64,000 nucleotides of DNA from Sminthopsis crassicaudata (lineage: Eukaryota): positions 290,609,765 through 290,673,764 of the forward strand of contig NC_133620.1 in NCBI RefSeq assembly GCF_048593235.1, read 5' to 3'. Below are positions 24,701 to 27,700 of the stretch, in pieces (positions within the stretch are counted from its first letter, which is position 1; each line of letters opens with the position of its first letter). The translations under genes and the position numbers were made by a program. The notes under the pieces were generated by a model that saw only the letters and a list, made by a program, of their open reading frames with translations, was not told where the DNA came from and ran no database searches.

Positions 24701-27700
24701 CAGAACAACACATTAGGACTCTGATTACCTAGGCCCTAAGAAACTGAAATGCAAGAAGTAGAATATTCATTGGGAAGAACACCATAGAGACATGGCTTAA
24801 ATACAGAGGTAGTGATGAGGGTAATGGAGAGTCGGGGTATGATGACCTCCAAGAGTAATGGCTGCAATGAAAACAAACTTCTATTTCACAGCCCCATGTG
24901 TCTTGCTTCCTTCTTCTAGCTTCTTCTCTGTGTACTCCTTTTTTTCCCTTCTGTCTCTCACTACCTCCACTCTTCTGTGAAAGAGAAAGTAGGAATATCA
25001 TGTTTCACCTCAATATGCTTCTCCTCCTCAACATGCTTCTCCTCCTTCCGCTTCCCAACCTCCCAGGGTGATATCCAGCAGCTCCTCATCATCCCAGGAA
25101 CCAAGGCTGCCTATGAATCTTGTGAGCAACCACAAACACAATGTAAAGGAGGCCACGTGGAGAAACCCCAGAATCAAAAACATCAAGGAAACCACAAACC
25201 TCACAAGTGGGAAGTACACAGACTTCATAGGCCCCAAAACCAGGAACCCCAGAGACAGGTGAGCAAACCCTGGAATGGGGCAATTCCATACCTGTCTCCA
25301 TGAAGCTTCCCTCAAAACTATCAACCACCCCTTCTGGATGATGTTTTATCCCTGCCAGTCCTGACCCATCCTAACCTAGTTCTAGTCATTTTCTTCCTAC
25401 CATGCTCATTCACAAAACTATTTTTATTTTCATTAAAAAAAAGTTTTATGATGAAGTAATTTGGAGGAAATGGTAGGTGGGAACTGCTCATCCCTCTATC
25501 CATTGTTTCCTTCTAGCTTTAACATGTGCCCCTGTCCCTCCATTGCATCCTCACATCCGTATTAAGAGATTGGGGGAAGGAAGAAGTTGACAGAAAATGG
25601 AAATATTGGGAGATAAGAGATGGAAAAATAGCCAAAAAGAGGGGGAAATACAAATTCAGAGATAGTAATAATATTTGAGGCTCCAGGGAAGATGTGTATG
25701 AGGGGATCTAGTCTATGAGGGCCTAGAAATATATGGATAGATAAGCCTAAGAAGGGAGGAGAACTGTAGTAGAAAACTGAAGTGAGGGCTGATTAGGGTG
25801 AGAATTCTGATGAGAGATTGAGGGTTCAAGTGTTGAATCAATCTCTTAATTATGTTTGCTTCTGTCCACATGTGGGACTTACCCTCAATCTGGTTTTTTA
25901 CTTCCCCTACCACCCATTCTTCTCTCCCCTTCATCTTCCTTTTGTCTAATGCCTCATTTGTTTACTTCTTCTGTCCACCCTTCCTTTCTTTTGCTATTCC
26001 CCCCCCCCCAATAATCTCCTTATTCTTGTCCTGTCCCCATCTGATTTCCTATTCCCCTTGCCTTATTCCCAGTCTCCTGATTCTTTCTACTATGATTACG
26101 AGCCCCCTTATTATGATGTAACGACCACAGGAATCACCCCTGATTACCAGGTAGGAATCCCTTTAGAAATCCCTCTTTCTTACACAATCTACTTCAGGAT
26201 ATCCTTCCTGACCTTACAAATGTGGGGGACACTTTATATTGGGTGGTAGAGAAGAACACTCACTCATACTCCTTCCCATATCTCTTTCCTGCCACAGAGG
26301 CCTCAGAGCCCCTCTCAGAAGGCTTCCCCTACCTCCGTGGGCCGCAGGGTACCCCCACGCCGGCTTTCCCGGCTTTCCCCATCTGCCAAGAGGTCAGCGG
26401 CCCAGAGGGCCTCCACCTCATCTGCCCGGCAGCCTCCCCATGGTAGAAGTACAGGGTCAGCAAGGGACCGGGTTCCTCTATCCCGACACCCTTCTCGATG
26501 GGCAGCTACCCCACAAGCCTGGGGTCCCCCTCGGACTAGACGCACCGGTTATCAGCAGGTAGAACGGGGGATCCAGATCTCTGCCCTCTCCAATTTCCTA
26601 AATTTACCCCTTCAATACTCTTTCCCAGAGGGGTTGCAAGATCTGAGATTTACCCCCATCCCCAGTGCGGAGAGGTTTCTCCAGATGGGGGGATATCTGC
26701 TGCTTTGCACCTATCTACATTAATCCTCTCTCCCCTTTGCTTCTGGCTGTGCTCTTCCCTTTCTACCTTCCTTGAGGTCAGGACCCTTCCTTAGGTGAAG
26801 AAGATGGCACTCAGGAGTCCAACCCCCTGCTACTCCCTGAAGAGGTAACTATGCACCCTTCCATTCCAGTACATAATCTGGACAACTCTTGACACCTCCC
26901 CATTTCATCTTGATGAATCATTTTCTCCTCTCCTGGCCAGAGGGTAGTAAATATCTAGTTGTATGCCAGTCTTATTTAGATCCATTTTCCTAGCAGCTCC
27001 TAATGCTGTGCATTTGTCTTTATCCGTTGTCCTGCTTATCTCTCTTCTTTTGGTCTCATTCCCTCCACACCCCTTTGTGTCCCTCTCAGTCTTTTGATTA
27101 TTTTCTGGTCTCCTTTGCTGGACACTATGTCCATCCAATCACTATTTCTTGCTGTTTAGCCCTCTGGCCACCCTGCCCCTCCATCCACTCTTATTTGTAA
27201 ACTTTTTAGTCATCCAAATGCTCTTTGAATCTTTGGTGACTGTCCTTTTCCCTATGATTAGTGACCTTGACCCTTCAAAGGGGCTAGCCCTTCCTCAAAC
27301 AACCCCAAGCTCCAGCGAGTCAAAATCTTTTACTTATTCCCTTTCCCATTCTCAGCAACTTGTCAGATTCAAAGGGAAAGGGCAAAATAATCTTAACTGC
27401 CTCCTCACTATCTCCCCTCTACCTTCTCTTCCCATGCTGGGAAGGAGCAGATAGACCCCGAGGGTCCCCCCAGCGCTGGCAGGTTTCGAGCTGAGGAATA
27501 TGGGGAGGGGACCACAGACCCCCCTCCAGGTCCCTATGATTACACCTATGGCTATGGGGATGATTATCGAGAGGAGACAGAGCTTGGGCCAGCTCTCTCT
27601 GCTGAGACCACCCATTCAGGAGCTGTAAGTGATGTGTGTCTTCTCTATCTCCTCTCTGTAGCCTTCTAGCAGAGATGTGAGTGCCACCTCCTGTTATTAA

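What the first reader, a model, noticed from the sequence alone, without database searches (positions are those of the whole stretch)
26298..26558. Candidate basic cassette exon '6B' in the COL11A2 variable region (charge switch)
Seen in sequence: between exon 6 (ends 26150) and exon 7 (starts 26782) lies a 261-nt segment with a strong polypyrimidine acceptor (ctccttcccatatctctttcctgccacag) and a CAG|GTAGAA donor. It is phase 0-0 and open in the collagen frame: [87 protein letters not shown] (17 R, 2 K, 1 D). It keeps about a dozen CpGs in a CpG-poor intron and ends in GYQQ, echoing exon 6 (PDYQ). Established: COL11A2 is usually described with only acidic alternative exons 6-8, whereas its paralogue COL11A1 has an acidic 6A and a basic 6B. 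Inference: this may be the alpha2(XI) equivalent of 6B, switching the fibril-surface variable region from tyrosine-sulfated/acidic to polycationic (glycosaminoglycan-binding). Caveats: the segment is GC-rich and another frame is also open, and I cannot check whether predicted isoforms already include it.
Basis: partly seen in the sequence, partly recalled or inferred. Interest (0 to 1): 0.8.

Follow-up and report, generated by a model that had tools for sequence, protein, structure and literature searches.

The report
Conserved basic alternative exon in COL11A2
The 261-base segment in intron 6 of this marsupial's collagen XI alpha-2 gene is very probably a real alternatively spliced exon, at least as old as the marsupial-placental split, that inserts a strongly positively charged stretch into an otherwise acidic region; gene models of cats, ferret and rat already include it, but I found no paper that describes it.

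Summary
Window 26298-26558 is 261 nt with a polypyrimidine/CAG acceptor and a CAG|GTAGAA donor. It is open in the collagen frame (87 aa, 17 R + 2 K, 1 D, net charge about +18) and forms a 65% GC, 13-CpG island in a CpG-poor intron.

It is not a chance ORF. NCBI isoform models of five felids, the black-footed ferret and the rat carry an orthologous basic segment at the same place (…TPDYQ | RPxSP…PAKRSAA…PPRTRxSGYxQ | DPTPG…). Two eutherian genomic copies (pangolin L001, contig L003) keep both splice sites, the same frame, in-frame indels only, CGN-arginine CpGs and conserved intron blocks next to the donor.

The amino-acid sequence is only weakly constrained (dN/dS 0.6-0.8). What is kept is the frame, the boundaries, the arginines and the lack of acidic residues.

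It shows no sequence similarity to COL11A1 exon 6B, so the likeness is one of position and charge. In the models exon 6 and the new exon are used together, so inclusion offsets acidic charge rather than swapping it.

Junction reads in this species could not be obtained because the read-laying run was lost to a filter. RNA support here is indirect (k-mer shares).

The exon is annotated in silico but absent from the literature I could search. The scan had not noted it on other DNA.

The parts
25067..25258 (+). COL11A2 exon 5 (end of the TSPN/Laminin-G domain plus a His/Lys/Gln-rich tail, ...[12 protein letters not shown])
   Evidence: Translation and match to eutherian COL11A2 proteins. Donor is CAG|GTGAGC.
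26073..26150 (+). Exon 6, acidic and Tyr-rich ([26 protein letters not shown]), 26 aa, net charge about -5.5
   Evidence: The orthologue in pangolin L001 is at 6965-7042.
26259..26263 (+). Branch-point-like CTCAC, 35 nt upstream of the acceptor
   Evidence: A CTCAC also lies upstream of the pangolin acceptor. This is inference only.
26268..26297 (+). Polypyrimidine tract and CAG acceptor of the candidate exon
   Evidence: Conserved in pangolin and L003. The own-gene PWM gives 7.5 bits, higher than the acceptors of exons 6, 7, 8 and 9. It is part of the 3-way conserved block 26289-26314.
26298..26558 (+). Alternative cassette exon ('6B-like'): 261 nt, phase 0-0, 87 aa, Arg/Pro/Ser-rich, pI 12, net charge +18
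   Evidence: Orthologous segment in NCBI isoforms of felids, ferret and rat and in pangolin and L003 genomic DNA. Smith-Waterman z=15.7 against the ferret segment.
26379..26406 (+). Most conserved coding block inside the exon (PSAKRSAAQ; PAKRSAA in eutherians)
   Evidence: 3-way invariant at 21 of 28 positions. The motif is present in all species aligned.
26559..26585 (+). Weak donor GTAGAAC followed by a conserved G-run block (GGGGGATCCAGATCTCTGCC), a candidate intronic splicing enhancer
   Evidence: The block 26554-26585 is 3-way invariant at 29 of 36 positions. Identity to pangolin is 0.85, the highest in the interval. The enhancer role is inference from the known effect of G-runs next to weak donors.
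26628..26658 (+). Second conserved intronic block (GAGGGGTTGCAAGATCTGAGATTTACCCCCA)
   Evidence: 3-way invariant at 24 of 31 positions.
26782..26844 (+). Exon 7, acidic ([21 protein letters not shown]), 21 aa, net charge about -7
27445..27624 (+). Exon 8, acidic and Tyr-rich, 60 aa (14 D/E, 3 R by hand count)
   Evidence: Matches koala and eutherian proteins.
29874..29933 (+). Exon 9 ([20 protein letters not shown]), start of the minor helix
   Evidence: Matches ...[14 protein letters not shown] in all COL11A2 proteins.

Best explanation
Window 26298-26558 is a bona fide alternatively spliced cassette exon of COL11A2, at least as old as the marsupial-eutherian ancestor. It lies between the acidic exons 6 and 7 of the N-terminal variable region. 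When included, it inserts an 84-87-residue Arg/Pro/Ser-rich, acid-free and presumably disordered polycationic stretch (+17 to +23). That offsets most of the roughly -24 charge carried by exons 6, 7 and 8. Inclusion is probably regulated: the donor is weak (CAG|GTAGAA) and is flanked by intronic blocks conserved between marsupial and eutherians, including a G-run. Shown here: conservation of boundaries, frame, arginine codons and charge, and inclusion in annotated transcripts of several eutherians. Inferred: splicing in this species, regulated tissue-specific use, and a function in changing the electrostatic interactions of the retained collagen XI N-terminal domain at the fibril surface (for example with polyanions).
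For: (1) NCBI isoforms carry the orthologous segment exactly between exon 6 and exon 7. They are felid X9 (five species), Mustela nigripes X5 and X6, and rat XP_008771010.1 with an in-frame 41-aa short form. In ferret X5 and rat the chain continues in frame through exon 8 into the helix. (2) Genomic orthologues in pangolin (L001 7197-7448) and contig L003 (4246-4497) are 252 nt, with a conserved polyPy-CAG acceptor and CAG|GTAGA donor. Frame 0 is the only frame free of stops in all three genomes. (3) Indels are in-frame only: 9 nt between marsupial and eutherians, none between the two eutherians, and 129 nt in rat. The flanking introns show 15 indel events between the eutherians. (4) Between the eutherians the exon is 85.7% identical and the introns 77% (Fisher p=0.004), despite the exon's high CpG content. 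(5) CpGs fall in the CGN arginine phase of frame 0 in 10/13, 10/13 and 14/16 cases. R+K is 17-22 and D+E is 0-1 in frame 0 only. (6) Smith-Waterman z=15.7 against ferret and 5.4 against the rat short form, both beyond composition. (7) The four 3-way conserved blocks sit at the acceptor, at the PAKRSAA codons, at the donor plus G-run, and in a second intronic block. (8) RNA runs from three studies hold proportionally more of the exon's 31-mers than of the rest of 26000-26900 (for example 13/23 vs 9/61 and 11/23 vs 9/61). Runs of three related organisms hold 20/23 vs about 21/61.
Against: No junction read was seen in this species, because read laying was lost. The k-mer shares are indirect, and most of those runs are only guessed to be RNA. 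The two marsupial protein entries retrieved (koala isoform X6 and a wombat fragment) lack the exon, though other isoforms of those genes were not retrieved. dN/dS in the collagen frame is 0.59-0.77, against about 0.25 for exons 6 and 7, and all three codon positions are equally conserved, so the protein sequence is only weakly constrained. The donor scores at the bottom of the gene's own donors (0.3 bits). Most annotated long products (camel, goat, jerboa, pangolin) omit the exon. The felid models that include it are truncated isoforms.
Confidence: 0.8

Rival explanations
1. The segment is spliced into some transcripts, but as a low-level or non-productive event, for example tied to the truncated pro-alpha2(XI) transcripts. 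The encoded peptide itself would have no selected function, and conservation would reflect RNA-level or regulatory constraint.
For: dN/dS is 0.6-0.8 and the three codon positions are equally conserved. The felid and ferret X6 models that include it end prematurely after exon 7 (...EEPTGS*). The donor is weak. Most long annotated products omit it.
Against: The frame has been kept open in every lineage sampled since the marsupial-eutherian split, with in-frame indels only, including a 129-nt deletion in rat. CGN arginine codons are retained and acidic residues are excluded in frame 0 only. Ferret X5 and the rat model read through into exon 8 and the helix.
Confidence: 0.12
2. The segment is a conserved non-coding element (an intronic CpG-island-like enhancer) that happens to be open and AG/GT-bounded, and gene-prediction pipelines wrongly exonise it.
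For: It is a GC- and CpG-rich island. Conservation is independent of codon position. There are conserved non-coding blocks on its 3' side. COL11A2 is known to have intronic and promoter cartilage enhancers (background knowledge, not tested here).
Against: A non-coding element does not explain the CpG phase bias (10/13, 10/13, 14/16), the complete lack of indels that are not multiples of 3, or conservation peaking exactly at a functional-looking acceptor and donor. The same boundaries appear in alternative isoform models of several separately annotated species. RNA runs are enriched for the segment.
Confidence: 0.06
3. The segment is a chance open reading frame in a GC-rich patch of intron, with fortuitous splice-like dinucleotides.
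For: The chance of one frame being open at this composition is 0.15, a second frame is also open in the window, and many AG..GT open segments exist in the gene.
Against: All of the cross-species evidence.
Confidence: 0.02

Closest known systems
COL11A1 exon 6B (basic 51-aa alternative exon of the alpha1(XI) variable region; pI 11.9; PMC11800387, PMC8008188)
   Same: Both lie in the same gene family (clade-B fibrillar collagens). Both sit in the variable region just after the TSPN domain, downstream of the acidic Tyr-rich exon 6/6A and upstream of exon 7. Both are phase 0-0 cassettes with pI about 12 and no folded domain.
   Different: There is no sequence similarity beyond composition. The COL11A2 exon is Arg/Pro/Ser-rich with 0 lysine triplets, whereas alpha1(XI) 6B is Lys-rich with four KKK motifs. 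It is 84-87 aa (41 in rat) against 51 aa. In the annotated models it is used together with exon 6, whereas 6A and 6B of COL11A1 are described as alternatives. No binding partner has been tested.
Described alternative exons 6, 7 and 8 of COL11A2 (acidic domain)
   Same: Same gene and same variable region. All are phase 0-0 cassettes with weak splice sites.
   Different: Those exons are acidic (about -5.5, -7 and -11) and well constrained (dN/dS about 0.25 for exons 6 and 7). This exon is +18 and weakly constrained. It is not mentioned in any paper my searches reached.
NCBI predicted isoforms containing the segment (e.g. XP_059255972.1 Mustela nigripes X5, XP_044913315.1 Felis catus X9, XP_008771010.1 rat)
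   Same: Orthologous exon with the same boundaries and frame and the same conserved motifs: RPxSP, GxRxPPR, PAKRSAA, PPRTRxxGYxQ.
   Different: The marsupial copy has three extra codons and is only about 44-47% identical in amino acids. Whether this species' own annotation includes it is unknown.

Membership tests
Orthologue of the basic exon in annotated eutherian COL11A2 isoforms | Lies between exon 6 (...TPDYQ) and exon 7 (DP..GEE..) | tested here: met
Orthologue of the basic exon in annotated eutherian COL11A2 isoforms | Same splice boundaries (AG|CGG/AGG CCT ... CAG|GTAGA) and a length that is a multiple of 3 | tested here: met
   261, 252 and 252 nt, with the acceptor and donor aligned.
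Orthologue of the basic exon in annotated eutherian COL11A2 isoforms | Sequence similarity beyond composition | tested here: met
   Smith-Waterman score 192 against shuffles of 59±8 (z=15.7) for ferret, and z=5.4 for the rat short form. tblastn to pangolin spans all 87 aa.
Orthologue of the basic exon in annotated eutherian COL11A2 isoforms | Actually spliced into mRNA in this species | not tested
Only k-mer shares in RNA runs are available.
COL11A1 exon 6B-type basic exon (as a homologous family) | Position downstream of the acidic exon 6/6A in a clade-B collagen variable region, and pI about 12 | tested here: met
   The pI of alpha1(XI) 6B is 11.9 according to PMC11800387.
COL11A1 exon 6B-type basic exon (as a homologous family) | Detectable sequence similarity or the lysine-triplet motif | tested here: not met
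   Shuffles reach the observed score in 42-90% of trials, and the segment has no KKK. The 6b sequence was taken from PMC8008188 Table 2.
COL11A1 exon 6B-type basic exon (as a homologous family) | Used as an alternative to the acidic exon 6A (mutually exclusive) | tested here: not met
   In all retrieved models exon 6 and the basic exon are both present. These are models only, and isoform proportions are unknown.
Polyanion/glycosaminoglycan-binding basic segment | Measured binding to heparin, heparan sulfate or acidic matrix proteins | not testable with these tools
   Only the charge (+17 to +23, no acidic residues) is shown.

The most novel reading that the evidence does not exclude
The exon is an ancestral feature of clade-B fibrillar collagens. 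On this reading it is a true paralogue of COL11A1 exon 6B, diverged beyond recognition through K-to-R drift in a GC-rich MHC region. It would give alpha2(XI)-containing collagen XI/V fibrils a developmentally regulated polycationic patch that binds glycosaminoglycans or acidic mineralisation proteins. It has gone unnoticed in the literature I could search, which treats only the acidic exons 6-8 of COL11A2.
Probability: 0.2. Interest if true: 0.7.

Novelty: new member of a known kind. Interest (0 to 1): 0.5.

Why it matters
The variable region of the collagen XI/V N-terminal domains stays on the fibril surface and is thought to control fibril diameter and matrix interactions. For alpha1(XI), the acidic/basic choice between 6A and 6B is tissue-restricted and linked to mineralisation. 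For alpha2(XI), every paper my searches reached treats only acidic alternative exons. A basic exon kept since the marsupial-placental split would add about +18 to +23 charge, so the alpha2 chain could also be electrostatically tuned. It would also add coding sequence relevant to interpreting COL11A2 variants (Stickler/OSMED, deafness) if the human copy is intact. It is directly testable by RT-PCR, junction counting and heparin-binding assays. The interest is tempered because automated annotation already contains the exon in several species and because the protein sequence is only weakly constrained.

Tried and rejected
No junction, depth or strand data were obtained, and those places were not sent to the tool again.

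2. The search of protein representatives with the 87-aa peptide gave only two bacterial VCBS/FG-GAP proteins matching a 'GWAATS' motif. These are spurious. No 50%-cluster representative carries a detectable homologue.

3. The search for homologous proteins with the peptide alone found nothing. This is explained by the length window, and by the gene caller choosing another frame on genomic contigs, as seen on L003.

4. The alignment query with the long carrier as first row (A1) returned only relatives of the carrier. A local hmmsearch showed the profile itself would have scored COL11A2 at 121-182 bits. Reordering the rows (A2) worked.

5. The look-up of encoding contigs found no record for koala X6 or camel. 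The Sigmodon gene range was too long for DNA to be returned. L002, L004 and L005 end before intron 6.

6. Rfam found nothing except a sub-threshold Xist_exon1 match. The segment is not a repeat within the window and has no Pfam domain.

7. The primary papers on alpha2(XI) splicing (JBC 1995 and 1996) are not held, so I cannot exclude that one of them mentions this exon.

8. The own-gene splice PWM is biased by triple-helix exons, which all begin AG|GG. I used it only for rank comparison among the variable-region exons.

9. A dN/dS contrast between frames did not discriminate the coding frame.
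Full report
**Observation.** It is 261 nt, preceded by a 29-nt polypyrimidine tract ending in CAG and followed by GTAGAA. It is open in the frame set by exon 6 and gives an 87-aa peptide with 17 R, 2 K and 1 D (pI 12.0, net charge +17.9). 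It is a sharp compositional island: 65.5% GC and 13 CpG, against about 40-48% GC and 0-2 CpG per 200 nt in the flanking intron. Frame +1 is also open. The gene is COL11A2. Exon 1 (signal peptide), the TSPN/Laminin-G exons 2-5, the acidic exons 6-8 and 49 Gly-X-Y exons are all in the window, and RXRB lies upstream. Exon coordinates are exon 5 25067-25258, exon 6 26073-26150, exon 7 26782-26844, exon 8 27445-27624 and exon 9 29874-29933. All are multiples of three.

**Is it more than chance?** The open frame alone is not. At this composition one given frame of 261 nt stays open with probability 0.15, and AG..GT-bounded open segments of 240 nt or more are frequent in the gene. The segment is not a repeat in the window, matches no Rfam family and has no Pfam domain. 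Two intrinsic signals are specific to the collagen frame. First, 10 of the 13 CpGs occupy codon positions 1-2 of frame 0 (CGN arginine), the only phase in which both CpG transitions change the amino acid. Second, frame 0 has 19 basic and 1 acidic residues, whereas the other two frames have 5-7 basic and 4-5 acidic. A splice matrix trained on the gene's own 49 helix exons scores the acceptor (7.5 bits) above those of exons 6, 7, 8 and 9. The donor CAG|GTAGAA (0.3 bits) is weak and resembles the exon 6 donor CAG|GTAGGA.

**Transcript evidence in this species.** The two run searches give indirect support.
- Runs from three studies, four of them on record as RNA, hold a larger share of the segment's sampled 31-mers than of the rest of 26000-26900. 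Examples are 13/23 vs 9/61 (p=2e-4), 11/23 vs 9/61 (p=0.003) and 10/23 vs 12/61 (p=0.05).
- Runs labelled with three related organisms hold 20/23 vs about 21/61 (p about 2e-5).
- Whether the related-organism runs are DNA (pointing to conservation) or RNA (pointing to expression), the segment stands out from its intron. These counts are reconstructed from rounded shares.

**Cross-species evidence.** Searching with the peptide alone found nothing relevant, because of length limits and cluster representatives. An alignment query led by the exon-3 peptide (A2) retrieved COL11A2 proteins. Its profile had been validated locally.
- Several retrieved proteins carry an orthologous basic segment exactly between exon 6 and exon 7.
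- NCBI isoform X9 of five felids (for example Felis catus XP_044913315.1) has it.
- Mustela nigripes X5 (XP_059255972.1) and X6 have it as 84 aa: RPRSPSRRAPPPPRGRRTPPRKPTPPAKRSAARQ...PPRTRGSGYRQ.
- Rat XP_008771010.1 has a 41-aa short form that keeps both ends and loses 43 central residues in frame.
- A rabbit Ensembl/UniRef model has the first 30 residues.
- In ferret X5 and in rat the chain continues in frame through exons 7, 8 and 9 into the helix.
- The window peptide aligns to the ferret segment with a Smith-Waterman score of 192, against 59±8 for shuffles (z=15.7), and to the rat short form with z=5.4.

**Genomic orthologues.** The giant pangolin locus L001, whose annotated protein omits the exon, and a Logan contig L003 both contain the segment between their exons 6 and 7, at L001 7197-7448 and L003 4246-4497. 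Each is 252 nt.
- In all three genomes the acceptor (polypyrimidine tract plus CAG) and the donor (CAG|GTAGA) are in register.
- Frame 0 is the only frame without stops in all three.
- CpGs are in the CGN phase in 10/13, 10/13 and 14/16 cases.
- The peptide has 17-22 basic and 0-1 acidic residues.
- Marsupial against pangolin: identity is 0.79 in exon 6, 0.64 in the segment with a single 9-nt gap, 0.71 in exon 7 and 0.56 in intron with 53 gap columns. The maximum of 0.85 lies across the donor and the next 30 nt.
- Between the two eutherians the segment is 85.7% identical with no indel, against 77% and 15 indel events in the introns (Fisher p=0.004).
- Four blocks are nearly invariant in all three genomes: the acceptor and first codons (26289-26314), the PSAKRSAAQ codons (26379-26406), the donor plus a G-run (26554-26585) and an intronic block (26628-26658).
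- Conserved intron next to a weak donor is typical of regulated alternative exons. A G-run immediately downstream of a weak 5' splice site is an established kind of intronic enhancer. I infer that role here and did not test it.

**What is and is not constrained.** dN/dS in the collagen frame is 0.59-0.77, against about 0.25 for exons 6 and 7. The three codon positions are equally conserved, and reading the alignment in the other frames gives similar ratios. The amino-acid sequence is therefore only weakly constrained. What has been maintained since the marsupial-eutherian split is the reading frame, the boundaries, a few motifs (RPxSP, GxRxPPR, PAKRSAA, PPRTRxxGYxQ), the arginine content and the exclusion of acidic residues. 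This pattern fits a disordered linker that is constrained in composition and charge. It leaves some room for the rival view that inclusion matters more at the RNA level than for the protein.

**Mechanism.** Exons 6, 7 and 8 carry about -5.5, -7 and -11 net charge (exon 8 by hand count). Adding the segment (+18) would bring the variable region from about -24 to about -6. In every retrieved model exon 6 and the basic exon are used together, so the likely effect is charge neutralisation or a local cationic patch. A net positive region would need other exons to be skipped at the same time. A role in binding polyanions is plausible by analogy with alpha1(XI) 6B, which binds bone sialoprotein through lysine triplets (PMC8008188) and changes interaction with collagen I (PMC11800387). 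That role is untested.

**Comparison with the known.** The closest known case is COL11A1 exon 6B: 51 aa, pI 11.9, downstream of the acidic 6A. Position, phase and charge agree. Sequence similarity does not exceed shuffles, there are no KKK motifs, the lengths differ, and mutually exclusive use is not seen in the models. So the segment works like a 6B, but membership in a homologous 6B family is not shown. Four full-text searches found a basic exon 6B only for COL11A1 and no mention of a basic COL11A2 exon. The primary 1995-96 papers on alpha2(XI) splicing are not held.

**Verdict.** The segment is a real, conserved, basic alternative exon of COL11A2 (confidence about 0.8). It is already present in automated annotation of several eutherians but, as far as I could search, is not described in the literature. 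It is positionally and electrostatically analogous to COL11A1 6B without demonstrable homology. Use in this marsupial is likely but was not directly observed.

Noticed in passing
Proteins P0030, P0032, P0037, P0045, P0051, P0033 (…EEPTGS*) and P0036, P0049, P0050: Many eutherian COL11A2 models are truncated isoforms of about 300-400 aa. They leave exon 7 into '...PTGS' and then stop, or read exon 8 in a shifted frame (…SMGREAQTPQQGSTITPMAMG…), apparently through an alternative acceptor at exon 8. From memory these resemble the 'truncated pro-alpha chains' reported for human and mouse in 1996.
   Followed up: no
P0056 rat, residues after ...SPDYQ: The rat version of the basic exon has only 41 aa. 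It keeps the first 30 and last 11 residues and lacks 43 central ones, in frame. This could be a 129-nt deletion or an internal splice. I could not tell which without rat genomic DNA.
   Followed up: partly
L003 4203-4796: The automatic gene caller used on Logan contigs called a 197-aa ORF across the segment in a frame other than the collagen frame. This explains why peptide searches for the exon among called ORFs fail.
   Followed up: yes
window 25133-25258: The tail of exon 5 is itself basic and His/Gln-rich (…[37 protein letters not shown]; the last 53 residues of exon 5, from 25100, have pI 9.4). Its middle diverges from eutherians, while [10 protein letters not shown] is invariant across mammals.
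   Followed up: no
P0026 wombat; window 25259-25300: The wombat UniRef entry ends …QRQVSKNHMYPQ…, so it reads through the exon 5 donor into intron 5. The window's read-through is …[17 protein letters not shown]. This is a model artefact or a retained-intron transcript.
   Followed up: no
window 24238-24587, 40393-40545, 50743-50897, 53572-53727, 60743-61335: Copies of a SINE-like element of about 150 nt, with a tRNA-like head (…GGTGCAGTGGATAGAGCACCAGCCCTGAA…) and a GTGACCCTGGGCAAGTCACTTAA core, lie in both orientations inside and downstream of COL11A2.
   Followed up: no
window 8571-8818: A tandem array with a 36-nt period (5 overlapping copies of a 104-nt unit, 61-75% identical) lies upstream of the RXRB N-terminal region that another first-stage note flagged.
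   Followed up: no
window 15898-16000 and 20683-20770: Long (TG)n microsatellites lie on either side of COL11A2 exon 1 (about 18770): one upstream of the gene and one inside intron 1.
   Followed up: no
window 239-386 and 51023-51190: Two runs of N (148 and 168 nt). The second lies near the 3' end of the triple-helix exons. Both were left as they are.
   Followed up: no
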